A DNA stretch of 64,000 nt from Mytilus trossulus. Its lineage: Eukaryota. The stretch is from the NCBI RefSeq assembly GCF_036588685.1, contig NC_086376.1, forward strand, positions 90,995,630-91,059,629. The letters are read 5' to 3'. Position 1 is the stretch's first letter. Every line of letters starts with the position of its first letter. The position numbers and the translations under genes are program-made. Below are positions 25,686 through 60,324 of the stretch, piece after piece. Below the pieces are notes generated by a model. The model saw nothing but the letters and a program-made list of their open reading frames with translations, searched no databases and was not told the DNA's origin.

Positions 25686-26488
25686 ATCCACCATTTTCTA
25701 CTTTTGAAAATGCCTGTACCAAGTCAGGAATATGACAGTTCTTGTCTATTCGTTTTTGATGCGTTTTGTTATTTGATTTTGCCATGTGATTATGGACTTT
25801 CCGTATTGATTTTCCTCTGAGTTCAGTATTTTTGTGATTTTACGTTTTATACATTTGACGTGACTCTGTACTTATGCATCTCGCCATACTTTGAACCACA
25901 CAATTATTTTATTTATTATTTTTACTTTTACTGTTAAGTCTGTTTTTTTGTTATATCTACTTTGCGGGACTCTGCATTTATGTGTGCCGGCAAACTTTTA
26001 ACGACAAAATTATTTTATGTCTACCTGTGCGAATTTCAAACGCGGAATTTTACACCAGGACTTCCATCCTTTACGGGTAGACTCTTCATAGATATATAAA
26101 TTCGTAAAAGATAAGCAAAATGAGGATGGTAAATTTGATGTATGCCGTTTTCTTCTTCTTTGGTACATTTGTTGTATTTATAGTGATTAAGATGATAACA
26201 CAATGTTGACTGCTGTACCCCTAATTTTGACATTTTTACTCTTTGAGGATGTTTGTTTTGTTCACGCATCGTTGACAATGTAGTGGAATTTGATGAGACT
26301 TGCATACAAGTGAGATATTTAGCTAGCTATAAAACCAGGTTCAATCCACCATTTTCTACATTTGAAAATGCATGTACCAAGTCAGGAATATGACAGTTGT
26401 TATCTATTCGTTTGATGTGTTCGGACTTTTGATTTTGCCCTTTGATTTAGGACTTTCCTTTTTGAATTTTCCTTCGAGTTCAGTATTT
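25686..26488 (+). mobile_element. Family B 3'-UTR/pLTR segments: terminal fragment plus long copy
   Basis: 25686-25850 and 26345-26488 share tccaccattttctac...gtaccaagtcaggaatatgacagtt...gagttcagtatttt. 25852-25910 repeats 25060-25120. Confidence 0.8.
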
Positions 26489-27715
26489 TACAAAGTCTGA
26501 GGAGCTGCCAGGGGTTGAATATCGGATAAGTTGCGAAACGTATATCCCATAATCAGGTGAAGTTGGTATATTGCTACTAAGGTAAGGGAAATTGATAAAT
26601 CTGGGGGATATACTAATAGAACAAATCAGAAAAGTTCGGATTGTTAATGGAAAGAACATCATCAATATATCTGAAAATGAAATTAAATAATCTGGCTTCT
26701 TTGCTTTTTTTTACAATTATCTGAAAGAACTCCGATTCGCATGAAAATAAGGAAAAGTCGGCAAGGTGAGGCGCACATTTCCAAAGAAATGCCATATTCA
26801 ACAAATAAGTTGTCGATAAATCCAGCATACTGATCACTTGTTCCTCTGTGTAACACCTTTTACTCTCTTGTTCGCTATTAACCTAATATTATGATATCCC
26901 AAAGTAATAAATTTATAGTGTATGCTACCATTTTCATGTTTAAGGGCATTGATAATTTCAGGCGATTGTTCAATTTCACATCGGGAATGGCGGTATACAG
27001 GTTTGAAAAATGAAAAGTGTTTTCTATGGAACTAATTTCAGAAAAAGACCAAGATTTAAAATTATCCTGAAGTTCTTTACATTTTTTAAAGAATAAACAT
27101 ATGGTTGATATTACTACACGAGTAAACAGTTTCACAGAATTTCTGAAGATCCTCTTTCACTGCGGACAGAATTTTAGTCAATCTAATGGACACTTATTTA
27201 GTGGAACATTAGGTATTCAATACAAACAAGGTAAGTCTTCCAATTTGTTGTTAAATGCAATGTTCATTGAAGCCATGAAGGACTTATGATAAGCCAAAAT
27301 ATAATCCTTGTCAAATGATATGTTCTTGTATGTATGATTACCTGATCATAGTGCTCATTTACACCTAATGCTGTTATTAGACATTCGTAGTAATACGATT
27401 TACATACAAAGATAATATTATTTGAAGCTTTGTGACGTTTTATCAGAGACCTGATTGTTTTGACCCATTTTGAAAAAGTGTCCAGTTCAACTTTTTTTCG
27501 TTACATCCATGCTCTGGCGTATTCCTCAATGGAATTCATAATTATTTTGAAGGTATGGTTCCAATTGATATGTTGAGGTTCTCTTAACTTAGGACCATGA
27601 GAAATTACCTTTCAAAGATTTTCATGTTAAATTATGTTTAAATCCCTAGTTACAACATGGGCAGAGGGGTTGTAAATATAACGCGAGTGGGAACATTCAC
27701 ATGCCAGATGGTTAT
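26489..27715 (-). pseudogene. Second, inverted and internally deleted copy of the same Naiad-type RT
   Basis: Minus-strand ORF pieces DNFKSWSFSEISSI, CAPHLAD, EARLFNFIFRYIDDVLSINNPNFSD and FPYLSSNIPTSPDYGIYVSQLIRYS are closely similar to the 23250-24795 copy. Confidence 0.9.
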
Positions 27716-29074
27716 TCAAACGAATGAATAACAACTGTCATATTGCTGACTTGGTACAAAACTTACATAATCGAACCCGTGTTACATACGAAACAGGATG
27801 GGGTAACTGGTCCGCAGCATCAGTGAGACCACCGATATATGGTTGAATTAGTGTTGCTAATTCTTTAGTTTTTCTATGTTCTGTTTTGTATACTTTTTTG
27901 TTGTTGTTTTTTCGAAAGGGCTTGTCAGCTTATTTAAGACTTATGAGTTTGGATGCCCCTTTATCTTTTTCTTCTCTTTTTAAACACACACAGCTCTACT
28001 TTACTTTGTAATGAGGATGAACATTCCCATAAATATTTGTTTCCTGCGTGACTTTTCATGTAAATTACATGAATTGAGAATAGATAGCAATTTTCTAATA
28101 TACCAGCACACAAAAATAACCTTACTTGTAAATTCAATGAAAAAGATCTATTAAGAACTGTCAAAATGTATACCAACACACCAGTAAAACCCTTATTGTA
28201 AAATACATAAATTAGGATCTACAAGCAATTGTGAAGACAAAGATAAGTATATCAAAAATATGTATTATTATTTCATAGTTAAAAGTAAATTAAGACAAAT
28301 ACTTTACTCCGAGGAAAATTTAAAAATATTGGTCCCTATTTAACGGCAAAATCAGAGGTTCAAACACATCAAGTACTAAAGGGGGTCATCAACAGAGATG
28401 AGTGTTAGTATGACAAGTAAATTCTAACTTGCTAGAAATGAAATATTTTCATGTTATTTTGGGTATATTTAGATAAACCTTCATAATTAATTTCTTAAAC
28501 TCAAAAATTAAAAGCCGAATATAACGAATAAACACTGCCAAAGTTAAAATTCTAAAATGCTAGACTTGACCATATTGAAATTTGTTTTTAGTAGTATATT
28601 CTTATAAGCACGTACACCAGCGCATTTGGCATTCCATAAAACAATTTGAAGACATATTAGAAGTGATAATTTGACATTTATACTAAAGTGTAAAGTGCGT
28701 TTCTTGCTTGAAACGTGTTATTTTAATAAATTATGTCTCAGTGACACAATTTATCTAAGATACATAGAAACGTTTTATTTTAATGTTTTTAAGTCTCAGT
28801 GACACACTTTATTTAATATACTTATATAGAAATGTAATGTACAGATGACGACCCAAAAGTTGAAATTGTCGTCTTTTTTTGTTTTTAACTTGACCTACCG
28901 ATTTAAACTTTTCAATGGGTTGGTACTTATATGAGCAACACGACAGGTGTCTTATGCGAAGCAGGATTGGTATAATCTTCCAAAGCACCAGTGAGACTCC
29001 AGATGAATGTTGAGGTCCGTGTTGCTCAACCTTATGTTTTCTATGATGTGTTTTATAAACGCCTGTTTATTATT

Positions 29075-30445: not shown

Positions 30446-31200
30446 TGCTTTGTGAGTTGAGAAACAGACACATGGAATGGGTCAACAAAGTAGCGGACCT
30501 GCAGAGGATACCAAACCAATATTCACACTAATAAGTCGCAGACACATTGACAAAGTCTTGACAATGAAAAGACAATATATATATATACATGTATTAAAAC
30601 TTAAGATTGTGCAAAACAAACCCTAGCAACTTATTGAGGTGATGGCAGGTGGTCAGGAATGCGTATTCGGACGATCTTGCTCAACTTGTCATTCGTTGTG
30701 TTGCTGATATAAGAACACAGTTACTTCATACAACTAATTCAGTTAAATGGCATTGAAAAAAGAGGATGATGGATTGAAGTTATATATCATATATCAACAA
30801 TATCGTATCACAGGGAGATACATGTATGAAACTCCATACTAATGTGCAGCTTGTAAGTTGTTTCTTAGAAAAGAAAAGTTTACAATTGGAAAGCTGAAAT
30901 TCTCATTTTTTTTGTAAAGTTTTGTATTCAACTGACACGCATTGTCAATTCTTAATGCAAGTTATGACGTAAGCTAGATATAGGGAAACGGGGTATTAAT
31001 GCTAATGAGACAACTCGCAATCCAAATAACATTTTATAAAAGTAAACATTACAGGTCTATGTACGACCTTCAACACGGAACCTTGGCTCACAACGAACAA
31101 AAAGCTATAAAGGACCCCAAAATAACTTGTGTAAAACCATTCAAATGGGAAAAACAACGGTCCAATCTTTATAAAAAACGAGAAACGAGAAACACGTATA

Positions 31201-33999: not shown

Positions 34000-36900
34000 T
34001 CAAGTGGTGAATTTGAATCATCCTTTTGTAAATATTACGAACGCCATTATTAGTTGGTTGATCGGTATAGAATATCCGTTCCAATGATGACAGTATATGT
34101 TCCTATTGTCGTAACTACAACCACATTCTCTTTTCCAAGAATGTGACTTAACGAACTAGACTTATCACCGGGTTTGAACTTATATGATCAACACAAACTA
34201 TGTTACATGTGGAGCAGGAACTACTTACCTTTTTAAAGCACCTAAGATCACTCAAGCTTTTGGAGGTATCGTGTTGCTCAGTCTTTCCTTTTCTATGTTG
34301 TGTTTTACCTTTCTGGAGCACCTGAAACCACTCAAGCTTTGGAAGGTATCGTGTTGCTCAGCCTATCCTTTTCTGTGTTGTGTTTTACCTTTCTGGAGCA
34401 CCTGAAACCACTCAAGCTTTGGAAGGTATCGTGTTGCTCAGCCTATCCTTTTCTGTGTTGTGTTTTACCTTTCTGGAGCACCTGAAACCACTCAAGCTTT
34501 GGAAGGTATCGTGTTGCTCAGCCTATCCTTTTCTGTGTTGTGTTTTACCTTACTGGAGCACCTGAGATCACCCAAGCTTTGGGAGGTATCGTGTTGCTCA
34601 GTCTTTCCTTTTCTATGTTGTGTTTTACCTTTCTGGAGCACCTGAGACCACTCAAGCTTTGGAAGGTATCGTGTTGCTCAGTCTTTCCTTTTCTATGTTG
34701 TGTTTTACCTTTCTGGAGCACCTGATATCACCCAAGCTTTGGAAGGTATCGTGTTGCTCAGTCTTTCCTTTTCTATGTTGTGTTTTACCTTTCTGGAGCA
34801 CCTGAAACCACTCAAGCTTTTGGAGGTATCGTGTTGCTCAGTCTTTTCTTTTCTATGTTGTGTTTTACCTTTCTGGAGCACCTGAAACCACGCAAGCTTT
34901 TGGAGGTATCGTGTTGCTCAGTCTTTCCTTTTCTATGTTGTGTTTTACCTTTCTGGAGCACCTGAAACCACTCAAGCTTTTGGAGGTATCGTGTTGCTCA
35001 GTCTTTCCTTTTCTATGTTATGTTTTACCTTTCTGGAGCACCTGAAACCACTCAAGCTTTGGGAGGTATAGTGTTGCTCAGTCTTTCCTTTTCTATGTTG
35101 TGTTTTACCTTACTGGAGCACCTGAGATCACCCTAGCTTTGGGAGGTATCGTGTTGCTCAGTCTATCCTTTTCTATGTTGTGTTTTACCTTACTGGAGCA
35201 CCTGAGATCACCCTTGCTTTGGGAGGTATCGTGTTGCTCAGTCTATCCTTTTCTATGTCGTGTTTTACCTTACTGGAGCACCTGAGATCACCCTAGCTTT
35301 GGAAGGTATCGTGTTGCTCAGTCTTTCCTTTTCTATGTTGTGTTTTACCTTACTGGAGCACCTGAGATCACCCTAGCTTTGGGAGGTATCGTGTTGCTCA
35401 GTCTATCCTTTTCTATGTTGTGTTTTACCTTTCTGGAGCACCTGAGATCACCCTAGCTTTGGGAGGTATCGTGTTGCTCAGTCTATCCTTTTCTATGTCG
35501 TGTTTTACCTTACTGGAGCACCTGAGATCACCCTAGCTTTGGAAGGTATCGTGTTGCTCAGTCTTTCCTTTTCTATGTTGTGTTTTACCTTACTGGAGCA
35601 CCTGAGATCACCCTAGCTTTGGGAGGTATCGTGTTGCTCAGTCTATCCTTTTCTATGTTGTGTTTTACCTTACTGGAGCACCTGAGATCACCCTAGCTTT
35701 GGGAGGTATCGTGTTGCTCAGTCTATCCTTTTCTATGTTGTGTTTTACCTTACTGGAGCACCTGAGATCACCCTAGCTTTGGAAGGTATCGTGTTGCTCA
35801 GTCTTTCCTTTTCTATGTTGTGTTTTACCTTACTGGAGCACCTGAGATCACCCTAGCTTTGGGAGGTATCGTGTTGCTCAGTCTATCCTTTTCTATGTTG
35901 TGTTTTACCTTTCTGGAGCACCTGAAACCACTCAAGCTTTTGGAGGTATCGTGTTGCTCAGTCTTTCCTTTTCTTTGTTGTGTTTTACCTTTCTGGAGCA
36001 CCTGAGACCACTCAAGCTTTGGAAGGTATCGTGTTGCTCAGTCTTTCCTTTTCTATGTTGTGTTTTACCTTTCTGGAGCACCTGAAACCACTCAAGCTTT
36101 GGAAGGTATCGTGTTGCTCAGTCTTTCCTTTTCTATGTTGTATTTTACCTTACTGGAGCACCTGAGATCACCCAAGCTTTGGGAGGTATCGTGTTGCTCA
36201 GTCTTTCCTTTTCTATGTTGTGTTTTACCTTTCTGGAGCACCTGAGACCACTCAAGCTTTTGGAGGTATCGTGTTGCTCAGTCTTTCCTTTTCTATGTTG
36301 TATTTTACCTTTCTTGAGCACCTAAAACTACTCAAGCTTTTGGAGGTATCGTGTTGCTCAGTCTTTCCTTTTCTATGTTGTGTTTTACCTTTCTGGAGCA
36401 CCTGAGATCACCCTAGCTTTGGAAGGTATCGTGTTGCTCAGTCTTTCCTTTTCTATGTTGTGTTTTACCTTTCTGGAGCACCTGAGACCACCCAAGCTTT
36501 GGAAGGTATCGTGTTGCTCAGTCTTTCCTTTTCTATGTTGTGTTTTACCTTACTGGAGCACCTGAGATCACCCAAGCTTTGGAAGGTATCGTGTTGCTCA
36601 GTCTTTCCTTTTCTATGTTGTGTTTTACCTTTCTGGAGCACCTGAGACCACTCAAGCTTTTGGAGGTATCGTGTTGCTCAGTCTTTCCTTTTCTATGTTG
36701 TATTTTACCTTTCTGGAGCACCTGAAACCACTCAAGCTTTTGGAGGTATCGTGTTTCTCAGTCTTTCCTTTTCTATGTTGTATTTTACCTTTCTGGAGCA
36801 CCTGAGATCACCCTAGCTTTGGAAGGTATCGTGTTGCTCAGTCTTTCCTTTTCTATGTTGTGTTTTACCTTTCTGGAGCACCTGAGACCACCCAAGCTTT

Positions 36901-39900
36901 GGAAGGTATCGTGTTGCTCAGCCTATCCTTTTCTGTGTTGTGTTTTACCTTTCTGGAGCACCTGAAACCACTCAAGCTTTGGAAGGTATCGTGTTGCTCA
37001 GCCTATCCTTTTCTGTGTGTGTTTTACCTTTCTGGAGCACCTGAAACCACTCAAGCTTTGGAAGGTATCGTGTTGCTCAGCCTATCCTTTTCTGTGTTGT
37101 GTTTCACCTTTCTGGAGCACCTGAGATCACCCAAGCTTTGGAAGGTATCGTGTTGCTCAGTCTTTCCTTTTCTATGTTGTGTTTTACCTTTCTGGAGCAC
37201 CTGAAACCACTCAAGCTTTTGGAGGTATCGTGTTGCTCAGTCTTTCCTTTTCTTTGTTGTGTTTTACCTTTCTGGAGCACCTGAGACCACTAAAGCTTTG
37301 GAAGGTATCGTGTTGCTCAGTCTTTCCTTTTCTATGTTGTGTTTTACCTTTCTGGAGCACCTGAGATCACCCAAGCTTTGGAAGGTATCGTGTTGCTCAG
37401 TCTTTCCTTTTCTATGTTGTGTTTTACCTTTCTGGAGCACCTGAAACCACTCAAGCTTTTGGAGGTATCGTGTTGCTCAGTCTTTTCTTTTCTATGTTGT
37501 GTTTTACCTTTCTGGAGCACCTGAAACCACGCAAGCTTTTGGAGGTATCGTGTTGCTCAGTCTTTCCTTTTCTATGTTATGTTCTACCTTTCTGGAGCAC
37601 CTGAAACCACTCAAGCTTTGGGAGGTATAGTGTTGCTCAGTCTTTCCTTTTCTATGTTGTGTTTTACCTTACTGGAGCACCTGAGATCACCCTAGCTTTG
37701 GGAGGTATCGTGTTGCTCAGTCTATCCTTTTCTATGTTGTGTTTTACCTTACTGGAGCACCTGAGATCACCCTTGCTTTGGGAGGTATCGTGTTGCTCAG
37801 TCTATCCTTTTCTATGTCGTGTTTTACCTTACTGGAGCACCTGAGATCACCCTAGCTTTGGAAGGTATCGTGTTGCTCAGTCTTTCCTTTTCTATGTTGT
37901 GTTTTACCTTACTGGAGCACCTGAGATCACCCTAGCTTTGGGAGGTATCGTGTTGCTCAGTCTATCCTTTTCTATGTTGTGTTTTACCTTTCTGGAGCAC
38001 CTGAGACCACTCAAGCTTTGGGAGGTATCGTGTTGCTAAGTTTTTCCTTTTCTATGTTGAGTATTACCTTTCTGGAGCACCTGAGACCACTCAAGCTTTG
38101 GGAGGTATCGTGTTGCTCAGTCTTTCCTTTTCTATGTTGTGTTTTACCTTACTGGAGCACCTGAGATCACCCTAGCTTTGGGAGGTATCGTGTTGCTCAG
38201 TCTATCCTTTTCTATGTTGTGTTTTACCTTACTGGAGCACCTGAGATCACCCTAGCTTTGGGAGGTATCGTGTTGCTCAGTCTATCCTTTTCTATGTTGT
38301 GTTTTACCTTACTGGAGCACCTGAGATCACCCTAGCTTTGGAAGGTATCGTGTTGCTCAGTCTTTCCTTTTCTATGTTGTGTTTTACCTTACTGGAGCAC
38401 CTGAGATCACCCTAGCTTTGGGAGGTATCGTGTTGCTCAGTCTATCCTTTTCTATGTTGTGTTTTACCTTTCTGGAGCACCTGAGACCACTCAAGCTTTG
38501 GGAGGTATCGTGTTGCTCAGTCTTTCCTTTTCTATGTTGAGTTTTACCTTTCTGGAGCACCTGAGACCACTCAAGCTTTGGGAGGTATCGTGTTGCTCAG
38601 TCTTTCCTTTTCTATGTTGTGTTTTACCTTACTGGAGCACCTGAAACCACTCAAGCTTTGGAAGGTATCGTGTTGCTCAGTCTTTCCTTTTCTATGTTGT
38701 GTTTTACCTTTCTGGAGCACCTGAGATCACTCAAGCTTTGGAAGGTATCGTGTTGCTCAGTCTTTCCTTTTCTATGTTTATGTTTTACCTTTCTGGAGCA
38801 CCTGAGACCATTCAAGCTTTGGGAGGTATCGTGTTGCTCAGTCTTTCCTTTTCTATGTTGTGTTTTACCTTACTGGAGCACCTGAAACCACTCAAGCTTT
38901 GGAAGGTATCGTGTTGCTCAGTCTTTCCTTTTCTATGTTGTGTTTTACCTTTCTGGAGCACCTGAGATCACCCTAGCTTTGGAAGGTATCGTGTTGCTCA
39001 GTCTTTCCTTTTCTATGTTGTGTTTTACCTTTCTGGAGCACCTGAGATCACTCTAGCTTTGGAAGGTATCGTATTGCTCAGTCTTTCCTTTTCTATGTTG
39101 TGTTTTACCTTTCTGGAGCACCTGAAACCACTCAAGCTTTGGAAGGTATCGTGTTGCTCAGTCTTTCCTTTTCTGTGTTGTGTTTTACCTTTCTGGAGCA
39201 CCTGAGATCACCCAAGCTTTGGAAGGTATCGTGTTGCTCAGTCTTTCCTTTTCTATGTTGTGTTTCACCTTTCTGGAGCACCTGAGACCACTCAAGCTTT
39301 TGGAGGTATCGTGTTGCTCAGTCTTTCCTTTTCTATGTTGTGTTTTACCTTACTGGAGCACCTGAGACCACTCAAGCTTTGGAAGGTATCGTGTTGCTCA
39401 GCCTATCCTTTTCTATGTTGTGTTTTACCTTTCTGGAGCACCTGAAACCACTCAAGCTTTGGAAGGTATCGTGTTGCTCAGTCTTTCCTTTTCTATGTTG
39501 TGTTTTACCTTTTTGGAGCACCTGAGATCACCCTAGCTTTGGGAGGTATCGTGTTGCTCAGTCTTTCCTTTTCTATGTTGTGTTTTACCTTTCTGGAGCA
39601 CCTGAAACCACTCAAGCTTTGGAAGGTATCGTGTTGCTCAGTCTTTCCTTTTCTATGTTGTGTTTTACCTTTCTGGAGCACCTGAGATCACTCAAGCGTT
39701 GGGAGGTATCGTGTTGCTCAGTCTTTCCTTTTCTATGTTGTGTTTTACCTTTCTGGAGCACCTGAGATCACCCTAGCTTTGGGAGGTATCGTGTTGCTCA
39801 GTCTTTCCTTTTCTATGTTGTGTTTTACCTTTCTGGAGCACCTGAGATCACTCAAGCTTTGGAAGGTATCGTGTTGCTCAGTCTTTCCTTTTCTATGTTG

Positions 39901-40810
39901 TGTTTTACCTTTCTGGAGCACCTGAGATCACTCAAGCTTTGGAAGGTATCGTGTTGCTCAGTCTTTCCTTTTCTATGTTGTGTTTTACCTTTCTGGAGCA
40001 CCTGAGATCACTCAAGCTTTGAAAGGTATCGTGTTGCTCAGTCTTTCCTTTTCTATGTTGTGTTTTACCTTTCTGGAGCACCTGAGACCACTCAAGCTTT
40101 GGAAGGTATCGTGTTGCTCAGTCTTTCCTTTTCTATGTTGTGTTTTACCTTTCTGGAGCACCTGAGACCACCCAAGCTTTGGAAGGTATCGTGTTGCTCA
40201 GTCTTTCCTTTTCTATGTTGTGTTTTACCTTTCTGGAGCACCTGAGATCACCCAAGCTTTGGAAGGTATCGTGTTGCTCAGTCTTTCCTTTTCTATGTTG
40301 TGTTTTACCTTACTGGAGCACCTGAGATCACCCAAGCTTTGGAAGGTATCGTGTTGCTCAGTCTTTCCTTTTCTATGTTGTGTTTTACCTTTCTGGAGCA
40401 CCTGAGGTCACTCAAGCTTTGGAAGGTATCGTGTTGCTCAGTCTTTCCTTTTCTATGTTGTGTTTTACCTTTCTGGAGCACCTGAGATCACCCAAGCTTT
40501 GGAAGGTATCGTGTTGCTCAGTCTTTCCTTTTCTTTGTTGTGTTTTACCTTTCTGGAGCACCTGAAACCTCTCAAGCTTTGGAAGGTATCGTGTTGCTCA
40601 GTCTTTCCTTTTCTATGTTGTGTTTTACCTTTCTGGAGTACCTGAAACCACTCAAGCTCTGGAAGGTATCGTGTTGCTCAGTCTATCCTTTTCTATGTTG
40701 TGTTTTATGCACTGTTGTTGTCTGTTGATATTTTCTTTTTTTAACCATTATCCGTTCATTTTCGACTTATGAGTTTGAAATTCCTTTTGTATCTTTTATG
40801 TGTCTTTTTT
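34000..40810 (+). mobile_element. Family A Penelope-like 3' fragment hosting the 80-bp array
   Basis: 34000-34300 and 40700-40810 join into one continuous copy matching the reverse complement of 58110-58450 and the terminus seen at 10865-11038. Confidence 0.85.
34225..40707. repeat. 80-bp tandem satellite, about 81 copies
   Basis: Unit ttacctttctggagcacctgagatcacccaagctttggaaggtatcgtgttgctcagtctttccttttctatgttgtgtt. There is a 1-bp deletion near 37018 and a 1-bp insertion near 38779. It produces the serial 61-aa ORFs. Confidence 0.98.
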
Positions 40811-42562: not shown

Positions 42563-42605
42563 TTTTCATTTATATTCAATAGAAATATTAAATTACACTT
42601 ACTAT

Positions 42606-42756
42606 AATTATCCATTTTAAGTCGGTAACGTTCTCTTGTCACCATCTTACGGTGTTTATATATCACAATTTGTACGATTCGCTCGGGTATGTAACAACTT
42701 TTTAGATTTTTAATAGAGAAATTTATGTATTATTGAAAAGCTGTTACACCAGGGTT
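42606..42756 (+). pseudogene. Thumb-domain fragment of another Naiad-type RT
   Basis: Translates NYPF*VGNVLLSPSYGVYISQFVRFARVCNNFLDF...EKLLHQG, homologous to the thumb at 24690-24840. Confidence 0.8.
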
Positions 42757-45086: not shown

Positions 45087-47529
45087 ACTCAATTATAATC
45101 CTGGTACCTTTAATAACTATTGTATACTGTGAAAGAAATGGATTGAAACCAAAAAAACTATACATATGAAGTACGCTCCGAATTACAGTATATAGCAATA
45201 CAATGCTAATATGAACATGCAATATTCCGCCTATGGGAAAGACAACACTAGGCATTTGATTCCCGGCTTGGTATGATAATGACATAATATATTAGCCAAC
45301 AAGCACCACCAAACTCTCATTTATAGTCCGAGAACAAATCAAAACTGAGGACGATGAACGATGAAAGAAAGAAAAAAGTTTCCTAAATGCTGTAAGCCCT
45401 TAAAAGTTGTAGGAACATAGTAATAGGGTTTTAAAAATAGAGTTGACATATTTTAATGATTAGGACGTTTGACGACAAGTGTTACATATTACAGGATTAT
45501 CTGGATTTTACCATGTCAAGGTGCAATGTGCAATGAACATGGAAACGAATTTTGTTATAAGCCTAATACCTAGCATGTCGTTATGTTCTAGTGTATTGTT
45601 TATTTGTATATTTCTCTGTTCTGAATGTTCTTTCATTTATTATAATCCTAACATGTAAGAATGTTATATTTAACATTGCCATAAAAGCGAGAAGTTAGGC
45701 TAGCAAATTCAGATTCTTTTTATGAAAATGAACTGTACCATGTCAGGAAAATGACATTGTTATCTTAGCTTGTTTTTGTGTGTGTTGCATTGTCGTTTGT
45801 TTTTGTTGCACTTTAGTGTTTCTGTTGTTTCGTTGTTTTCCTCTTTTATTTGATGTGTTCCCCTCGGTTTTAGTTTGTAACCCGGATTTATTTTCTTTCT
45901 ATCGATTTATGACTTTCGAACAGCGGTATATTACTGTTGACTTTATTAAGGTTGAACAGCGGTATACTACTGTTGACTTTATTTATGCTGTATACTAACA
46001 ATTGCAAGCCAAGCCGAATGTTACGTGTATGTTGACAAGGAAACAGTCCATGTGACGACATGACACTTGCCCGGCAAATTATTGTAATTCAGAATAGACA
46101 TGCACTCTATCCGCATTGTGCATGACTACCAGAGAAGCAGCAAATAGCCATTTGATATTTTAGGTGTGTCACCGATATAGCCGGGTAAAATGGCGTTCCG
46201 GCTAAATGTAAATCAAGAAGGAAGATTTCGCTCCTTAAACTTTTATTTTAGCAGTCCGGAAAAACCGAACAACAAACTCAAAACTAAATGTAATGTAACA
46301 TACAAACAATAACAATATATATAAGCACAAGGAATTACAGGATTAAGCAGATTAACAGATGACAAATTAGAAATAACAATAGATTAAAAGAGTAATTAGT
46401 GTCCGACACGTATTTGTAAACCATAGTCCAAACTGTCACAGAGAATAAATAATGAAATAAATAGAGTAAATGCATTCAAGGCCTAAATTTACGACAAAGT
46501 CTAGATAAATGCAAAACCTAAATATACATTAAATCAATTGAATAACTAAAATGTTGTTTAAAAACTAATTTTATTGCACAGTCTAAATAGTCCGGTCATA
46601 CCACCCCGGATCGGTTAAACAAGACCCTGAACATACGAGTTACATGATTGCATTAGCCGACTTTATATACAAATGTGTGTGGCCAAGTGTACGTTATTTG
46701 CATGTTTATTTTTCGAACTTTGTTTAAAAAATTGAAAATAAGACATTTGGTGCATTATATTTTCAGATGTCCAAACAATAAAAAATGGTGTAACAGTTCC
46801 ATACAATGTTTGAACAATTTGACGAACATGATTTGTTTTATTTTTCGCGACCAAGCCCGCATCCTTTTGCTAAAACATGATCGCATAATGACCAGCACTT
46901 TTCCCGTTTAATAATATACAATTTAAATGAGGCGCTTAATAGATTATTCCATCAACTCACTTTCAAAACATTTTCAGAAAACTAGCACCAACTTTAATTG
47001 TCCATGATGGTCGAACCGTCGAGCGGTTTCATAAAAGAAAAAAAAATAAAAGAAAATATAAAGACTTTATAAGCAAATTAAATCAGAGCAACAACTTCTA
47101 CGAGTGAGGAAGAATGTCCGCAATTATTAGTCGTATGTTTATTAAATGTCTTAACCGATTCATTTTCTACAGACCAAATTAAGTGACTGATCGCAGACTC
47201 TTTATTGTTGACGTTCTGAAATCTGCATCGTAGCCATTACTATTATTTTTACGCGAAGGCTCTGCAATATTTTCAAGGAAATGTTTTTTTTTTTGAAGAC
47301 ATATAAACGTTTTATTCCTAAATATTTCCTGTGTACAATTACCTTAGTCGTCCAGGATCAGGCTAAGGGTCCCTGTTTACAAAAATAAACCATCTATCCA
47401 GGGGATAATTATAATTATAGGGTACCCACATAAAAGATGTGTATAATTATAGGGTACCCACATAAAAGATGTGCATCAAGGAAATGTTTAAAATATTCTA
47501 GATTAATACAAATTTGTAGCAATAGATCA

Positions 47530-50500
47530 CTTACCACTTGAAATCCTTGGCCAATATATCCCTGATAATCAACAACCGTGCATCAAAAAGGTCATGATAG
47601 GAAACACAATTCTGGAACTGCGAATCAACTTGGTAATAATTTCTCAGTTGGAGCTGCTGCTGTAATTTTGCTACATAGAAATTGTCATGATATGAGACAC
47701 AATTACCTGTATATGTTGTATCCTTAATTTCGAAGGGAACGAGTATACGTCAATCATTGACACCAAACCTTTGAAAAGTTGTCATCTATATATGGAACGT
47801 CAGGTTCTAGGATGATGCTAACATTAGTTAGTTCTTCCTTTGAAGCTACATCTATATATGGAACGTCAGGTTCTAGGATGATGCTAACATTAGTTAGTTC
47901 TTCCTTTGAAGCTACATCTATATATGGAACGTCAGGTTCTAGGATGATGCTAACATTAGTTAGTTCTTCCTTTGAAGCTACATCTATATATGGAACGTCA
48001 GGTTCTAGGATGATGCTAACATTAGTTAGTTCTTCCTTTGAAGCTACATCTATATATGGAACGTCAGGTTCTAGGATGATGCTAACATTAGTTAGTTCTT
48101 CCTTTGAAGCTACATCTATATATGGAACGTCAGGTTCTAGGATGATGCTAACATTAGTTAGTTCTTCCTTTGAAGCTACATCTATATATGGAACGTCAGG
48201 TTCTAGGATGATGCTAACATTAGTTAGTTCTTCCTTTGAAGCTACATCTATATATGGAACGTCAGGTTCTAGGATGATGCTAACATTAGTTAGTTCTTCC
48301 TTTGAAGCTACATCTATATATGGAACGTCAGGTTCTAGGATGATGCTAACATTAGTTAGTTCTTCCTTTGAAGCTACATCTATATATGGAACGTCAGGTT
48401 CTAGGATGATGCTAACATTAGTTAGTTCTTCCTTTGAAGCTACATCTATATATGGAACGTCAGGTTCTAGGATGATGCTAACATTAGTTAGTTCTTCCTT
48501 TGAAGCTACATCTATATATGGAACGTCAGGTTCTAGGATGATGCTAACATTAGTTAGTTCTTCCTTTGAAGCTACATCTATATATGGAACGTCAGGTTCT
48601 AGGATGATGCTAACATTAGTTAGTTCTTCCTTTGAAGCTACATCTATATATGGAACGTCAGGTTCTAGGATGATGCTAACATTAGTTAGTTCTTCCTTTG
48701 AAGCTACATCTATATATGGAACGTCAGGTTCTAGCATGATGCTAACATTAGTTAGTTCTTCCTTTGAAGCTACATCTATATATGGAACGTCAGGTTCTAG
48801 CATGATGCTAACATTAGTTAGTTCTTCCTTTGAAGCTACATCTATATATGGAACGTCAGGTTCTAGCATGATGCTAACATTAGTTAGTTCTTCCTTTGAA
48901 GCTACATCTATATATGGAACGTCAGGTTCTAGGATGATGCTAACATTAGTTAGTTCTTCCTTTGAAGCTACATCTATATATGGAACGTCAGGTTCTAGGA
49001 TGATGCTAACATTAGTTAGTTCTTCCTTTGAAGCTACATCTATATATGGAACGTCAGGTTCTAGGATGATGCTAACATTAGTTAGTTCTTCCTTTGAAGC
49101 TACATCTATATATGGAACGTCAGGTTCTAGGATGATGCTAACATTAGTTAGTTCTTCCTTTGAAGCTACATCTATATATGGAACGTCAGGTTCTAGGATG
49201 ATGCTAACATTAGTTAGTTCTTCCTTTGAAGCTACATCTATATATGGAACGTCAGGTTCTAGGATGATGATAACATTAGTTAGTTCTTCCTTTGAAGCTA
49301 CATCTATATATGGAACGTCAGGTTCTAGGATGATGCTAACATTAGTTAGTTCTTCCTTTGAAGCTACATCTATATATGGAACGTCAGGTTCTAGGATGAT
49401 GCTAACATTAGTTAGTTCTTCCTTTGAAGCTACATCTATATATGGAACGTCAGGTTCTAGGATGATGCTAACATTAGTTAGTTCTTCCTTTGAAGCTACA
49501 TCTATATATGGAACGTCAGGTTCTAGGATGATGCTAACATTAGTTAGTTCTTCCTTTGAAGCTACATCTATATATGGAACGTCAGGTTCTAGGATGATGC
49601 TAACATTAGTTAGTTCTTCCTTTGAAGCTACATCTATATATGGAACGTCAGGTTCTAGGATGATGCTAACATTAGTTAGTTCTTCCTTTGAAGCTACATC
49701 TATATATGGAACGTCAGGTTCTAAGATGATGCTAACATTAGTTAGTTCTTCCTTTGAAGCTACATCTATATATGGAACGTCAGGTTCTAGGATGATGCTA
49801 ACATTAGTTAGTTCTTCCTTTGAAGCTACATCTATATATGGAACGTCAGGTTCTAGGATGATGCTAACATTAGTTAGTTCTTCCTTTGAAGCTACATCTA
49901 TATATGGAACGTCAGGTTCTAGGATGATGCTAACATTAGTTAGTTCTTCCTTTGAAGCTACATCTATATATGGAACGTCAGGTTCTAGGATGATGCTAAC
50001 ATTAGTTAGTTCTTCCTTTGAAGCTACATCTATATATGGAACGTCAGGTTCTAGGATGATGCTAACATTAGTTAGTTCTTCCTTTGAAGCTACATCTATA
50101 TATGGAACGTCAGGTTCTAGGATGATGCTAACATTAGTTAGTTCTTCCTTTGAAGCTACATCTATATATGGAACGTCAGGTTCTAGGATGATGCTAACAT
50201 TAGTTAGTTCTTCCTTTGAAGCTACATCTATATATGGAACGTCAGGTTCTAGGATGATGCTAACATTAGTTAGTTCTTCCTTTGAAGCTACATCTATATA
50301 TGGAACGTCAGGTTCTAGGATGATGCTAACATTAGTTAGTTCTTCCTTTGAAGCTACATCTATATATGGAACGTCAGGTTCTAGGATGATGCTAACATTA
50401 GTTAGTTCTTCCTTTGAAGCTACATCTATATATGGAACGTCAGGTTCTAGGATGATGCTAACATTAGTTAGTTCTTCCTTTGAAGCTACATCTATATATG

Positions 50501-53500
50501 GAACGTCAGGTTCTAGCATGATGCTAACATTAGTTAGTTCTTCCTTTGAAGCTACATCTATATATGGAACGTCAGGTTCTAGCATGATGCTAACATTAGT
50601 TAGTTCTTCCTTTGAAGCTACATCTATATATGGAACGTCAGGTTCTAGCATGATGCTAACATTAGTTAGTTCTTCCTTTGAAGCTACATCTATATATGGA
50701 ACGTCAGGTTCTAGCATGATGCTAACATTAGTTAGTTCTTCCTTTGAAGCTACATCTATATATGGAACGTCAGGTTCTAGGATGATGCTAACATTAGTTA
50801 GTTCTTCCTTTGAAGCTACATCTATATATGGAACGTCAGGTTCTAGGATGATGCTAACATTAGTTAGTTCTTCCTTTGAAGCTACATCTATATATGGAAC
50901 GTCAGGTTCTAGGATGATGCTAACATTAGTTAGTTCTTCCTTTGAAGCTACATCTATATATGGAACGTCAGGTTCTAGGATGATGCTAACATTAGTTAGT
51001 TCTTCCTTTGAAGCTACATCTATATATGGAACGTCAGGTTCTAGGATGATGCTAACATTAGTTAGTTCTTCCTTTGAAGCTACATCTATATATGGAACGT
51101 CAGGTTCTAGGATGATGCTAACATTAGTTAGTTCTTCCTTTGAAGCTACATCTATATATGGAACGTCAGGTTCTAGGATGATGCTAACATTAGTTAGTTC
51201 TTCCTTTGAAGCTACATCTATATATGGAACGTCAGGTTCTAGGATGATGCTAACATTAGTTAGTTCTTCCTTTGAAGCTACATCTATATATGGAACGTCA
51301 GGTTCTAGGATGATGCTAACATTAGTTAGTTCTTCCTTTGAAGCTACATCTATATATGGAACGTCAGGTTCTAGGATGATGCTAACATTAGTTAGTTCTT
51401 CCTTTGAAGCTACATCTATATATGGAACGTCAGGTTCTAGGATGATGCTAACATTAGTTAGTTCTTCCTTTGAAGCTACATCTATATATGGAACGTCAGG
51501 TTCTAGGATGATGCTAACATTAGTTAGTTCTTCCTTTGAAGCTACATCTATATATGGAACGTCAGGTTCTAGGATGATGCTAACATTAGTTAGTTCTTCC
51601 TTTGAAGCTACATCTATATATGGAACGTCAGGTTCTAGGATGATGCTAACATTAGTTAGTTCTTCCTTTGAAGCTACATCTATATATGGAACGTCAGGTT
51701 CTAGGATGATGCTAACATTAGTTAGTTCTTCCTTTGAAGCTACATCTATATATGGAACGTCAGGTTCTAGGATGATGCTAACATTAGTTAGTTCTTCCTT
51801 TGAAGCTACATCTATATATGGAACGTCAGGTTCTAGGATGATGCTAACATTAGTTAGTTCTTCCTTTGAAGCTACATCTATATATGGAACGTCAGGTTCT
51901 AGGATGATGCTAACATTAGTTAGTTCTTCCTTTGAAGCTACATCTATATATGGAACGTCAGGTTCTAGGATGATGCTAACATTAGTTAGTTCTTCCTTTG
52001 AAGCTACATCTATATATGGAACGTCAGGTTCTAGGATGATGCTAACATTAGTTAGTTCTTCCTTTGAAGCTACATCTATATATGGAACGTCAGGTTCTAG
52101 GATGATGCTAACATTAGTTAGTTCTTCCTTTGAAGCTACATCTATATATGGAACGTCAGGTTCTAGCATGATGCTAACATTAGTTAGTTCTTCCTTTGAA
52201 GCTACATCTATATATGGAACGTCAGGTTCTAGCATGATGCTAACATTAGTTAGTTCTTCCTTTGAAGCTACATCTATATATGGAACGTCAGGTTCTAGCA
52301 TGATGCTAACATTAGTTAGTTCTTCCTTTGAAGCTACATCTATATATGGAACGTCAGGTTCTAGCATGATGCTAACATTAGTTAGTTCTTCCTTTGAAGC
52401 TACATCTATATATGGAACGTCAGGTTCTAGCATGATGCTAACATTAGTTAGTTCTTCCTTTGAAGCTACATCTATATATGGAACGTCAGGTTCTAGGATG
52501 ATGCTAACATTAGTTAGTTCTTCCTTTGAAGCTACATCTATATATGGAACGTCAGGTTCTAGGATGATGCTAACATTAGTTAGTTCTTCCTTTGAAGCTA
52601 CATCTATATATGGAACGTCAGGTTCTAGGATGATGCTAACATTAGTTAGTTCTTCCTTTGAAGCTACATCTATATATGGAACGTCAGGTTCTAGGATGAT
52701 GCTAACATTAGTTAGTTCTTCCTTTGAAGCTACATCTATATATGGAACGTCAGGTTCTAGGATGATGCTAACATTAGTTAGTTCTTCCTTTGAAGCTACA
52801 TCTATATATGGAACGTCAGGTTCTAGGATGATGCTAACATTAGTTAGTTCTTCCTTTGAAGCTACATCTATATATGGAACGTCAGGTTCTAGGATGATGC
52901 TAACATTAGTTAGTTCTTCCTTTGAAGCTACATCTATATATGGAACGTCAGGTTCTAGGATGATGCTAACATTAGTTAGTTCTTCCTTTGAAGCTACATC
53001 TATATATGGAACGTCAGGTTCTAGGATGATGCTAACATTAGTTAGTTCTTCCTTTGAAGCTACATCTATATATGGAACGTCAGGTTCTAGGATGATGCTA
53101 ACATTAGTTAGTTCTTCCTTTGAAGCTACATCTATATATGGAACGTCAGGTTCTAGGATGATGCTAACATTAGTTAGTTCTTCCTTTGAAGCTACATCTA
53201 TATATGGAACGTCAGGTTCTAGGATGATGCTAACATTAGTTAGTTCTTCCTTTGAAGCTACATCTATATATGGAACGTCAGGTTCTAGGATGATGCTAAC
53301 ATTAGTTAGTTCTTCCTTTGAAGCTACATCTATATATGGAACGTCAGGTTCTAGGATGATGCTAACATTAGTTAGTTCTTCCTTTGAAGCTACATCTATA
53401 TATGGAACGTCAGGTTCTAGGATGATGCTAACATTAGTTAGTTCTTCCTTTGAAGCTACATCTATATATGGAACGTCAGGTTCTAGGATGATGCTAACAT

Positions 53501-53600
53501 TAGTTAGTTCTTCCTTTGAAGCTATTGTAACATGTCCGCCTAGTATGAATAAAGAAACAATTCGAAATTAAGAAAACAAAACCAGTCGTATACCATAGAA
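47530..53600 (-). pseudogene. Old Naiad-type RT relic split by the 66-bp array
   Basis: The minus strand entering the array reads LFLYSY*ADMLQ*LQRKN*LMLASS*NLTF then YIDD after a 1-nt shift. After the array come FEIKDTTYT, FYVAKLQQ-like decay of the F.CSNIP segment, and CVSYHDLFD. Motif order equals 24388-24840 and 58440-58560. Confidence 0.8.
47783..53524. repeat. 66-bp tandem satellite, 87 near-identical copies
   Basis: Unit catctatatatggaacgtcaggttctaggatgatgctaacattagttagttcttcctttgaagcta; the 5742-bp span equals 87 x 66. Confidence 0.99.
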
Positions 53601-55042: not shown

Positions 55043-55997
55043 ATATATAAAATTTATTCCTGGTTTCTATGGTGAGTTTATTTACATACGTCCTATTCTT
55101 AATTTCTCATGTTACAATAGATAAAGTAACTATTACGTCAAGGTTACGGAGTGTTTTATCTCATCATTAAGGAGACATTCACTTATCAGATATAGATCTT
55201 GTTTATTATATAGGTGAATGTTCCACACCTGAGTTCACCACACATTTTGTGAGGGATTCGTGTTCCTGAGTCTAGTTTTCTATGTTGTGTTTTGTTTACT
55301 TTGATCTTTTCCTGTCTCATCAATTTAGTTGTCCGTTTGTTTTCGACTAAGGAGTTTGAACTTACTCAGGTATCTTTCAGCTCTCTTCTAAGAATCTTAT
55401 ACAAATAGGAGTCTTTTTGTATTGTTTTCCTGGTCGTTAATTATTATATACAATCCACCCTTAATAGAAATTTATAAAATAAATGCATTCGTAATATTTT
55501 CCCAATACGTAACAATTTATAACAATACAACAATACATATGGGACGTATGTCTACGAAATAGTGGATGGAAACTGGTTTCAAAACTAGCTTAATCACTTT
55601 CTTAATCACTTTCACTTGTATAACAGTCAAATTCCCTTATATTGTCAACGATGCGTGAACGAAACGAACAGACATATTATGAACAAATGTCAAAGATAGG
55701 GGTACAGCAGTCAACATTGTGTTATAATCTTAATTACCATAAAGAAATAACAAATATGTTACAAAGAAGCAAAACAATGGCAAATAGACCAAGCATATTC
55801 GCAAAGATTAAAGATAAATTTACCATAGAACAATAACACAATGATGGGAAGTACAGAGACATGTAATATATGAATATTGAGTGCCGGGTGTCTTTTCAGT
55901 TTTTTTTTACATCTTTGACCATACTTTGATTCACTTTTTGTAAAAGTGGCCTTTTATGTATAATTAGTTATCAAAGGTACCAGGATTATAATTTAGT

Positions 55998-58109: not shown

Positions 58110-58575
58110 CGAAAATAAACTGACAACGCCATGGCTACAAATCATAAAGACAAACAGACAAACAATAGTACACATGATACAACATAGAACACTAAAGAAT
58201 AAGCAACAAACTAGGGGTGTTCTCAGGTGCTCCGGAAGGGTAAGCAGATCCTTCTACACATGTGGCACCCGTCGTGCTGCTTATGTGGTAACACATACGG
58301 CAAATAGTATAATTCGGTAGGTCACATTCATTAAAGGGAAGGGTATTGTAGTTACGACGTAAGGAACATATCCGATGTCAATGGTGAAACGGTTTCAACT
58401 CGTGATAGCGTCCGTAAAACGTAGGGACGAGTTCAACTTCACCATTCGAAACACTTGTTTTAACAGTTTCCTTATGCGAAACAACCCTCTTTCAAGAAAA
58501 TCATGATAGGAAATGCAAGCACGGGAATATCGTATCAATTGGGAGATATATACCCCGTATGCAAGTACTGCTTGA
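58110..58575 (-). mobile_element. Family A Penelope-like fragment: RT C-terminus plus 3' UTR
   Basis: ORF 58395..58649 contains AYGVYISQLIRYSRACISYHDFLERG..KLL, followed by ...cttacccttccggagcacctgagaacacccctag...tctatgttgt. Confidence 0.88.
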
Positions 58576-60324
58576 ATGTAAATGAGTAACATATGTACGA
58601 ATAAAAGTCCCGGATAAAAATGTATGCCATGTAATAGATATGTTTCCAAGCGAGTATCCAGTATCGTTCTGTAAAGTCAACAAGTAGTCGATTAGAACTT
58701 CTTCGTCGAGTTGCAATTTTCAACTCTATTTTTACTATGATAGATCAATGATAATTGCTTGAGCTTCAAGGAGCGTTCCATTAAAGTCGAATTTATGAAT
58801 AAAATAAAATAAAATAGCATTTCACTCGGAAAGCTTTAAGCAAATACTCGGAAGCAGAGATGTATAAAAGTTGATACAGTAGTAAAACAAACACTATCTG
58901 ATCACAAAGGGCCATAATAATCAAATTTATCCAAAGTCATTGATGCCTGAGAGAACAGAAACCTAAGATTCCGAATAATTTCTAAATTTATAAACGGACA
59001 ACTTAAACATGAACCAACTAGTAGAACATCATTTGTTACAAAACAAAAACCCTCAATACTCTCCAGAGTAGTCGAGTACTCGTTGCCATCCATTGTTTAC
59101 ATGCTAACGCCTAACAGTATTCAGAAGTTTAAATATTTAAAATTCTGTATTGGAAACTATTATCATATCAACGTTTATCTACAAAGAGTACGTTTAGTGC
59201 TGCATTTATATTTATCATTGTAAACCCTTATAAAGTCTCTATTTACTTAGTATCCATAAGTATCTACAATACTATAGGTTGAGTAGTGACATTGAAGAAA
59301 AGATATCTCATTTTACTATATTTGACCTATATTCTATAGCCAAAGCTTGCACGTATTACGTCAGACCACTTGGGGGACATGATTTTATCAAACAAAGTAG
59401 GAGTAAAATTGCACTGTTTTATCAGTTATAAATATGTAGTTGACAGGTTTGATTGATTGTTGTATGTGAACACGAGCTGTAGATATTGGTCAAGGTTGTA
59501 CATATGAAAAGGGGAAGTTGATTCTTAAAAATACAAACCGTCTGAAAGTTCCTTTGCACTTTTCTTTTGTTATATTTCTAAAGTATATTTAAAGTTCCTT
59601 TTCATTCAGGCTTTCGAATGCTATATTGGTCGTGCACTTTTATTAAAGATAAAGAAACATTTACCTCATGCTATGTGCGATGCCTACCAACCACACAACT
59701 GTCGATTTATTACTATAAGCAGGAATGAGACTGCACATCTTCATGTGCCAATCCAGCATTCACAATCGAATAAATTGTGAACTGTGATAGATATCAGTAA
59801 ACGTGCACCCGTAAAGCATATTTGTTTTAGAGCTTTCAATAATAAAGATTTTGACTTGAAAAGTTTCAGATTGTACAATTGTTTCTAGTGTTATACACAT
59901 GCCATTGAAATCACTTAGTTTAAATAAATCACATTATCAAAAAAAAAAATTAGTTGTATTCTAATATGAAAGAAATCAAGAGGTACAGAGCCTAATTTCT
60001 TTCTATTTCAGTCCGTATTTCTAATCCGAACTACAATTTTAAGCGATGATTATAGTATTCGATGCAAGCTTCGAAGTTACCCTTTGAAGGGACAAACAAA
60101 AAGCAAGATAACAAAAAAAATACCGATATCCGAGGAAAATTTTAAACGGAAATTCTCTCAACAAGAGTAAAAACAGACTATATCAATTTATTGAACATGA
60201 ATGACAAGTAACATCTGAACACTCTATATGTCCTGTGTTTTAATGAATTTTCTTTGTATAAGAACTTCTGATCGAAAGAAAACATTGCATATATTTTATT
60301 ATGATTTCGCAAAGCAAACTTTGA

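What the first reader, a model, noticed from the sequence alone, without database searches (positions are those of the whole stretch)
47530..53600. 66-bp satellite built from the active-site segment of a dead reverse transcriptase
Seen: collapsing the array to one unit gives, on the minus strand, LFLYSY*ADMLQ*LQRKN*LMLASS*NLTF-(1-nt loss)-YIDD...FEIKDTTYT...CVSYHDLFD. This parallels LFSYESESLQTLVKNKKIKEARLFNFTFRYIDD...LKIKETTDT at 24388-24575 and CISYHDFL near 58500. The 'PYID' in every repeat is thus the remnant of catalytic motif C (YIDD). Known: satellites can arise inside transposons. Inference: a very recent 87-fold amplification inside an old, stop-riddled RT, which would be mis-annotated as a 1,500-1,900 aa repeat protein.
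Basis: partly seen in the sequence, partly recalled or inferred. Interest (0 to 1): 0.8.

Follow-up and report, generated by a model that had tools for sequence, protein, structure and literature searches.

The report
Repeat array from dead retroelement fragment
A 66-base piece of a long-dead jumping-gene fragment (the part that once encoded the enzyme's active site) has been copied head-to-tail 87 times at one spot in a mussel-like genome, which is a tidy example of a known, probably functionless process.

Summary
Window 47783-53524 is exactly 87.0 copies of a 66-bp unit. Of these, 73 are identical and only three distinct mutations occur. The unit is found nowhere else in the 1.3-Gb assembly.

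The interpretation also holds. The 40 bp upstream, the unit, and 254 bp downstream are colinear with single-copy sequence in many copies of an abundant Naiad-type Penelope-like retroelement (PLE). DNA identity is about 70%. The locus has a 1-nt loss before YIDD and deletions of about 12, 6 and 88 nt. The unit equals reverse transcriptase (RT) codons T842-D863 plus one base of D864 in an intact 1016-aa relative, so the PYID in each unit is the remnant of motif C.

All units share the same roughly 30% decay and the same stops, so amplification came after the decay.

- **What the "dead RT" is:** only a 360-bp fragment that lacks both ends of the gene.
- **What the array is:** a single-locus minisatellite, not a genome-wide satellite.
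- **How old the tandem state is:** contigs from three differently labelled organisms already carry a unit-to-unit junction, so only the large expansion looks recent.

A second array 7 kb away (80 bp x 81) derives from another Naiad fragment's 3' UTR. Tandem repeats derived from transposable elements, including PLE-related ones, are already described. Interest is low to moderate.

The parts
53525..53564 (-). Upstream remnant of the Naiad RT. It covers codons about 829-841 of the 1016-aa reference ORF, just after motif B, and reads ELFLYSY*ADMLQ. Homology to the element stops here, so the copy is 5'-truncated.
   Evidence: blastn to L015-L017 and L033-L043. tblastn gives 16/31 identities, ungapped. 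Pairwise alignment to L039. No further upstream RT homology.
47783..53524 (-). Array of 87 x 66 bp. Each unit equals RT codons T842-D863 plus the first base of D864, with a 1-nt deletion in the R860 codon and three in-frame stops. One frame per strand is open.
   Evidence: The unit is unique to this locus in the assembly.
47684..47782 (-). Naiad RT remnant directly after motif C. It holds the last two bases of the second D codon, then NFSK and FEIKDTTYT. It has deletions of about 12 and 6 nt and frameshifts relative to intact copies.
47529..47682 (-). Naiad RT C-terminal remnant, equivalent to NFPFLSSNIP...ISQLIRYSRACISYHDFL...KLLNQ. It follows an 88-nt deletion. Homology ends about 33 codons before the ORF end.
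   Evidence: more than 40 genomic matches at 71-80% identity.
47754..52433 (-). Mechanical ORF of 1559 aa, a repeat of ASKEELTNVSI[I/M]LEPDVPYIDV. Only the YID is in the old RT frame. The first ATG is created by the C38G variant.
47779..53571 (+). Mechanical ORF of 1930 aa on the opposite strand, a repeat of SIYGTSGSRMMLTLVSSSFEAT.

Best explanation
A 5'-truncated copy of a Naiad-type Penelope-like retroelement landed here long ago. It decayed through stop codons, frameshifts and internal deletions, reaching about 30% divergence from every other copy examined. Later, one 66-bp stretch of the wreck was duplicated in tandem. That stretch is the RT coding sequence between motif B and the first Asp of motif C (YIDD). 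The array then grew by ordinary repeat dynamics: replication slippage at first, then unequal exchange of multi-unit blocks with homogenisation. It now stands at 87 near-identical units (5.7 kb) in this assembly. It is a single-locus, non-mobile and most likely functionless minisatellite. Its long open frames are a by-product of a 66-nt (22-codon) period. Shown: the array, its uniqueness, its colinearity with the RT, that amplification followed decay, and the tandem state in other samples. Inferred: the slippage and unequal-exchange mechanism, neutrality, and the lineage-specific size of the expansion.
For: - **Array structure.** 87.0 units, 73 identical, three distinct mutations. C38G sits in three runs whose starts are spaced 26 and 28 units apart, as expected if a block of about 27 units was copied.
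- **Uniqueness.** No other array of this unit exists in the 1.3-Gb assembly.
- **Colinearity.** Flank, unit and flank are colinear with single-copy sequence in L017 and in 11 of 11 further family copies. The alignment to the open-frame copy L039 shows 70-73% identity, a 1-nt deletion before YIDD and deletions of about 12, 6 and 88 nt.
- **Parent family.** ORF of 1016 aa; N-terminal GIY-YIG above the Pfam cut-off (30.1 bits against 22.6); RVT_1 at E 1.8e-5 ending just after YIDD. The CxC, GxKF/Y and DKA motifs can be read in the ORFs and match the Naiad diagnosis in PMC8557442. Two copies lie head-to-tail 4.2 kb apart. No hammerhead ribozyme was found. The first look returned more than 33,000 candidate matches.
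- **Amplification after decay.** The unit is 67-72% identical to 14 family copies, whereas units differ from one another at 14 of 5742 positions.
- **Independent samples.** In contigs of three organism labels the flank contig breaks exactly 30 nt into the unit (47812). Two of them (X2, X10) also hold a 96-nt (66+30) contig identical to the unit cycle. In X1 the flank contig also ends at 47812 and unit contigs lie on the array. The flanks carry allele differences.
Against: - Direct protein-level similarity of the locus to RT is weak: E 0.5 to 4 against the distant family, and 3e-4 and 0.016 against the closer one in a small database.
- No microhomology is visible at the duplication boundaries, so the founding event is unexplained.
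- The copy number of 87 is not confirmed by spanning reads.
- Lack of function is assumed, not tested. One possibly-RNA run has a contig on the flank at 47497-47743.
- The unit folds into a hairpin better than all but 1 of 200 shuffles (z -3.05). This could bear on the mechanism or be chance.
Confidence: 0.85

Rival explanations
1. The array is part of a real gene. It could be an exon encoding a 22-residue repeat protein born from the frame-shifted RT remnant. Alternatively it could be a 'mirage'-type minisatellite built on a splice junction of a host transcript, a type other notes of this scan report as frequent in this genome.
For: One frame on each strand is open through the whole array. 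Each unit holds branch-point-like CTAAC and YAG or GT-like strings (direct reading of the unit). A possibly-RNA run has a 247-nt contig on the adjacent flank. Earlier scan notes describe many splice-junction minisatellites in this genome; these are unchecked leads.
Against: With a 22-codon period and this base composition, at least one open frame among six is the likely outcome, about 0.7 by my estimate. No unit contig appeared in the possibly-RNA run. There are no other ORFs or recognisable exons in 41-64 kb. Units are identical at all codon positions, so there is no signal of selection. The sequence is a decayed transposable-element fragment.
Confidence: 0.05
2. The array was made by the retroelement machinery itself, through RT template switching or stuttering during insertion. 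Alternatively it belongs to a mobile composite element that carries internal tandem repeats.
For: Penelope-like elements are known for complex tandem and inverted insertions, and some related families carry tandem repeats (PMC8557442). A second array in the window also derives from a Naiad fragment.
Against: All 14 family copies examined carry the segment once. The array is unique in the genome. All units share the post-insertion decay (three stops, a 1-nt deletion, about 30% divergence) yet are 99.8% alike, so the amplification postdates the decay.
Confidence: 0.03
3. The resemblance to RT is chance, and the monomer comes from ordinary non-transposon DNA.
For: Direct tblastn against a distant Naiad protein is not significant (E 0.5 and 4.2). 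Pfam finds nothing in short translated pieces of a neighbouring Naiad copy in the window (22906-24908).
Against: DNA matches spanning the flank-unit boundary reach genome-wide E 1.6e-8, and the downstream flank reaches E 3e-15. The matches fall in the same order and spacing in 12 independent RT-encoding copies. Alignment shows 73% identity over 334 aligned nt.
Confidence: 0.02
4. The array is real, but its size in the assembly (87 units) is an assembly artefact, either expanded or collapsed. This is not exclusive of the main reading.
For: No spanning reads could be examined. Read laying cannot lay reads inside the repeat, and only contigs were available.
Against: In the best-matching run the k-mer depth of unit contigs is about 44-52 times that of the unique flank contig (about 1400-1650 against 32). 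That implies dozens of copies. The tool warns that such depths are not copy numbers.
Confidence: 0.1

Closest known systems
Tandem repeats and satellite DNAs derived from transposable elements (reviewed in PMC12628747 and PMC9659126; oyster satellitomes in PMC11136912)
   Same: The monomer is an internal segment of a transposable element. The array is flanked by the rest of the element. It expanded after insertion. The review explicitly lists gag and pol segments of retrotransposons as sources.
   Different: This is a single 5.7-kb locus rather than an abundant multi-locus satellite. The source is a Naiad PLE RT-coding fragment rather than a Helitron or Helentron, an LTR, or a UTR.
Penelope-related satellite DNA in fish (HviSat02-2707 of Harttia, PMC11955569)
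   Same: A tandem repeat related to a Penelope-like element.
   Different: That monomer is 2.7 kb, a large part of an element, and it is a genome-wide satellite. Here the unit is a 66-bp coding sub-segment at one locus.
Naiad clade of Penelope-like elements (Craig et al. 2021, PMC8557442)
   Same: [quoted passage not shown]
   Different: The locus itself is only a decayed 360-bp piece of the RT. It is not an element.
Classical hypervariable minisatellites
   Same: The unit is tens of bp long, the array spans several kb at a single locus, the units are near-identical, variant units occur in blocks, and copy number probably varies between samples.
   Different: Copy-number variation is only hinted at by contig k-mer depth. 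The array is not GC-rich and has no recognisable recombination motif.

Membership tests
Tandem repeat derived from a transposable element | Head-to-tail array of one monomer | tested here: met
   87.0 x 66 bp with no indels. The unit-to-unit junction is also present in independent contigs.
Tandem repeat derived from a transposable element | The monomer is homologous to an internal segment that occurs once per copy of the element | tested here: met
   The unit aligns at 67-72% identity to 14 Naiad copies, once in each. The boundary-spanning match reaches genome-wide E 1.6e-8.
Tandem repeat derived from a transposable element | The array flanks continue colinearly into the same element | tested here: met
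   Three blocks fall in the same order and similar spacing in L017 and L033-L043. Alignment to L039.
Satellite DNA in the strict sense | Abundant, long arrays at many loci or in heterochromatin | tested here: not met
   The only array of this unit in the 1.3-Gb assembly is this 5.7-kb one.
Naiad Penelope-like element (parent family, judged on intact relatives L031 and L039) | GIY-YIG endonuclease placed N-terminal to the RT | tested here: met
   Pfam GIY-YIG at residues 143-232 scores 30.1 bits against a cut-off of 22.6. The RT lies downstream.
Naiad Penelope-like element (parent family) | Diagnostic CxC, GxKF/Y and DKA motifs (PMC8557442) | tested here: met
   Read directly in the ORFs. L031 has CDC...GHVITGDL, GPKF and PADKA. 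L039 has CTC, GPKY and PADKA.
Naiad Penelope-like element (parent family) | RT domain with the catalytic motif C | tested here: inconclusive
   RVT_1 scores E 1.8e-5 and 25 bits, below the 29.6-bit cut-off, and E 0.043 for L031. The FDFS, PMGTNCAP and FRYIDD motifs are readable. There was no PDB sequence hit.
Naiad Penelope-like element (parent family) | No canonical hammerhead ribozyme; partial tandem organisation | tested here: met
   No Rfam match in the 10-kb locus L031. Two ORFs lie head-to-tail 4.2 kb apart.
Naiad Penelope-like element (parent family) | Insertion-in-fingers domain between motifs A and B | not tested
   The spacing of about 90 aa between FDFS and PMG looks long, but no alignment to other RTs was made.
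Splice-junction ('mirage') minisatellite | The unit contains an exon edge plus a splice site used by a host gene | not testable with these tools
   No transcript model was available. Only splice-like strings were seen by eye.

The most novel reading that the evidence does not exclude
Decayed Naiad fragments may be preferred seeds for large minisatellite expansions in this mussel genome, since two of the three arrays of 3-6.5 kb in this window derive from different Naiad fragments. The 66-bp array would then be a young, strongly copy-number-variable locus, with about 1-4 units suggested in two organism labels against dozens here. That would point to a sequence-, structure- or transcription-linked amplification process related to the unusually frequent junction minisatellites noted elsewhere in this genome.
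Probability: 0.1. Interest if true: 0.5.

Novelty: new member of a known kind. Interest (0 to 1): 0.25.

Why it matters
This is a clean, fully resolved example of how a tandem array is born from a dead retroelement. The single-copy ancestor state, the exact codons amplified, and the order of events (decay first, amplification later) can all be read from the sequence.

- **Annotation hazard.** The 22-codon period creates ORFs of 1559 and 1930 aa. ORF- or gene-callers could report these as giant repeat proteins carrying a spurious RT-like 'YID' signature.
- **Possible marker.** The locus may serve as a hypervariable marker among closely related mussels if the hinted copy-number differences are real.

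It does not reveal a new kind of element or mechanism.

Tried and rejected
- **Direct tblastn against the window.** Window Naiad ORF pieces gave no hit at the locus at E <= 0.01.
- **tblastn with the intact 1016-aa Naiad ORF.** This gave only E 0.5 and 4.2 at the locus, so I moved to DNA colinearity and a closer family.
- **Pfam on short ORF pieces.** Nothing was found.
- **phmmer of the Naiad ORF against PDB.** Nothing was found.
- **Rfam and tRNA scans.** The scans around the array were empty, so no known RNA explains the locus. Rfam E-value scans of the 80-bp array region and of a Naiad tail gave no twister or hammerhead match.
- **Read laying on the whole locus.** I followed the tool's own advice and laid a part with four units. 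As a result, the upstream junction and any single-unit allele could not be examined.
- **Microhomology at the duplication boundaries.** None was found: the junction is G|T, against flank boundaries A|T and G|A. An ACAA on both sides does not fit a 66-bp period.
- **The 45-bp array (2675-5682).** No Naiad relationship was found.
- **TRF on 150 kb of other loci.** Tandem arrays are common in this genome, which weakens the 'Naiad as preferred seed' idea.
- **The search for homologous proteins.** I did not run it on the array ORFs, because it is costly and the question is peripheral. Whether public annotations contain such a protein is therefore untested.
- **No reconstruction.** The consensus line that align_proteins printed was not used.
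Full report
**1. Observation**

Tandem Repeats Finder reports one array at 47783-53524: period 66, 87.0 copies, 99% matches, no indels. I cut the minus strand into 66-nt units.
- 73 units are identical.
- 12 units carry a single change, C38G, in three runs: units 17-21, 43-46 and 71-73. The run starts are 26 and 28 units apart.
- Two units carry private changes, C39T and G31T.

That is 14 differing positions in 5742, from three distinct mutations. The spaced runs suggest that a block of about 27 units was copied more than once, which fits unequal exchange. With only three runs this stays a suggestion.

One frame on each strand lacks stops. This gives mechanical ORFs of 1559 aa (minus strand, 47754-52433) and 1930 aa (plus strand, 47779-53571). 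The first ATG of the minus-strand ORF is created by the C38G variant. With 22 codons per unit and this base composition, at least one open frame among six is the expected outcome (my estimate is about 0.7).

**2. Uniqueness**

I searched the whole 1.3-Gb assembly with one unit plus either flank. The 66-bp unit occurs as an array only here. Outside the array, the unit plus 40-50 bp of upstream flank matches three dispersed single-copy places at 72-73% identity, with genome-wide E values of 1.6e-8 to 4.4e-6. The downstream flank (47682-47529) matches more than 40 scattered places at 71-80% identity, with a best E of 3e-15.

**3. What those places are**

The fetched relatives (L015-L020) carry tblastn matches to the window's own RT-like ORF at 24360-24908. 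The matches sit exactly where the DNA matches lie. In L017 the upstream and downstream matches lie on the same strand, in the same order, about 200 bp apart. That is a single-unit, colinear relative.

A search with L017 recovered an abundant family (8486 first-look candidates, copies about 85% alike). In 11 of 11 further copies the locus matches in three blocks with constant order and spacing:
- flank plus unit at family positions 1600-1706;
- window 47734-47684 at family positions 1769-1819;
- window 47682-47529 at family positions 1909-2066.

One copy, L039, has a 722-aa open frame that runs off the end of the fetched stretch. Against it, the upstream piece gives 16/31 identities ungapped through four stops (E 0.016). 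The last unit plus downstream flank gives E 3e-4 in one frame.

A nucleotide alignment to L039 shows 70% identity over 115 nt for the upstream piece and 73% over 334 nt for the downstream piece. It also shows four lesions in the window locus:
- a 1-nt deletion in the Arg codon before YIDD;
- a 12-nt deletion after YIDD;
- a 6-nt deletion;
- an 88-nt deletion.

**4. Identity of the parent**

[quoted passage not shown] RVT_1 scores E 1.8e-5 for L039 and ends just after YIDD, and E 0.043 for L031. Both scores are below the gathering cut-off.

The ORFs show the CxC, GxKF/Y and DKA motifs. The element unit is about 4.2 kb in head-to-tail pairs. No hammerhead ribozyme was found. The first look returned more than 33,000 candidates. 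These features are the diagnosis of the Naiad clade of Penelope-like elements, which is reported to dominate bivalve genomes (PMC8557442).

The window holds at least eight other Naiad fragments.

**5. Anatomy of the locus**

In L031 numbering, homology starts at about residue 829 (window 53564) and ends at about residue 984 (window 47529). The unit equals codons T842 to D863 plus the first base of D864.

In the RT frame the unit reads *LQRKN*LMLASS*NLTF. Two leftover bases of the Arg codon follow, then YID. The open frame of the array (ASKEELTNVSIILEPDVPYIDV) is therefore out of the RT frame except for YID.

No RT homology lies further upstream. The last 33 or so codons and the 3' tail are missing downstream, where a very high-copy repeat sits at 47284-47476. 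Collapsed to one unit, the 'dead RT' is about 360 bp.

**6. Order of events**

The unit is 67-72% identical to each of 14 family copies. Every unit carries the same stops and the same 1-nt deletion. Units differ from one another at only 0.24% of positions.

The amplification, or at least the last homogenisation, therefore came long after the fragment had decayed. This argues against an origin during reverse transcription and against a mobile composite element.

**7. Other samples**

As the tool advised, I laid 47200-48046, which holds four units.
- In runs of three organism labels (X1, X2, X10) the unique flank contig stops at 47812, exactly 30 nt into the first unit. That is where a 31-mer graph must branch if both a flank-to-unit and a unit-to-unit junction exist.
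- X2 and X10 also hold a 96-nt contig (66+30) identical to the unit cycle.
- Their flank contigs differ from the window: a 9-bp deletion in X2 and three substitutions in X10. They are therefore other alleles or taxa.

This shows that the tandem state is real and is not private to this assembly.

The ratio of contig k-mer depth between unit and flank is about 44-52 in X1, 3.4 in X2 and 1.3 in X10. The tool warns that these depths are not copy numbers. I take them only as a hint that the large expansion is specific to the lineage of the assembled sample.

A possibly-RNA run has a 247-nt contig on the flank only, so there is no evidence that the array is transcribed.

**8. Mechanism**

The most likely history is a founding tandem duplication of 66 bp followed by growth through slippage and unequal exchange of multi-unit blocks. 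The duplication boundaries show no microhomology.

Each unit can form a small hairpin. Folded as DNA, two units give z = -3.05, and 1 of 200 shuffles folds as well. This might favour slippage, but the evidence is weak.

**9. Context**

Tandem repeats derived from transposable elements are well described. Sources include pol and gag segments of retrotransposons (PMC12628747), oyster satellitomes (PMC11136912) and a Penelope-related satellite in fish (PMC11955569). This locus is a new member of that kind. Because it is a single locus, it is better called a minisatellite than a satellite.

The 80-bp x 81 array at 34225-40707 has the same kind of origin. It amplifies a piece of the 3' UTR of another Naiad fragment, whose ORF tail lies at 34009-34089. 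The 45-bp array at 2675-5682 shows no such link.

Tandem arrays are common in 150 kb of other loci from this genome. Two Naiad-derived arrays out of three is therefore only suggestive of a preference.

Earlier notes of this scan call the genome a Mytilus mussel and report many other minisatellites and very abundant Naiads. I used them as context only and did not verify the species.

**10. Verdict**

- the remnant is a short fragment, not a whole RT;
- it is a single-locus array;
- the founding duplication is not very recent.

The kind of feature is already known, and interest is low to moderate.

Noticed in passing
window 34009-40810 (+): The 80-bp x 81 array (34225-40707, units 89-96% alike) is also derived from a Naiad element. 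The tail of a Naiad ORF lies at 34009-34089. One unit plus both flanks matches the 3' UTR of dispersed Naiad copies once each, at 73-82% identity (for example L046 2774-3181). Two of the three large arrays in this window therefore come from different dead Naiad fragments.
   Followed up: partly
window 2675-5682: The 45-bp x 67 array occurs only here in the assembly. Its flanks show no Naiad homology, and there are only two weak flank matches on another chromosome.
   Followed up: partly
window 47284-47476: A very high-copy dispersed repeat lies next to the Naiad remnant. Its contig k-mer depth exceeds 10,000, against about 32 for the unique flank. It has a perfect 32-bp x 2 duplication at 47410-47473 and an A-run at about 47290. 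It looks like a SINE or MITE and was not classified.
   Followed up: no
window 10141-10222, 18625-19360 (-), 22822-24950 (+), 26486-27719 (-), 30830-30961 (-), 42582-42755 (+), 55226-55393 (+), 58355-58601 (-): At least eight further Naiad fragments lie in the window. They include a nearly full RT at 22822-24950 facing an inverted truncated copy at 26486-27719, an arrangement typical of Penelope-like elements. Naiad-homologous DNA makes up about 11% of the non-array part of the window.
   Followed up: partly
L031 (G000:C21:2849500-2859499): Two apparently intact Naiad ORFs (1016 and 935 aa as listed) lie head-to-tail 4.2 kb apart. Many genomic copies have a 1056-aa open frame, so the family looks young and possibly active.
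   Followed up: no
L017 403-2151 (-): A 582-aa ORF lies next to a Naiad copy. By eye, from its sequence alone, it looks like a B-box plus coiled-coil plus NHL-like (TRIM-like) protein. No family scan was run.
   Followed up: no
L016 4301-4945; L018 5472-6232; L042 2510-3471; L045 940-1129; L046 3780-5115: Tandem arrays with periods of 28-351 bp are frequent in arbitrarily fetched loci of this genome, about one per 25 kb. Minisatellite formation seems to be generally common here.
   Followed up: no
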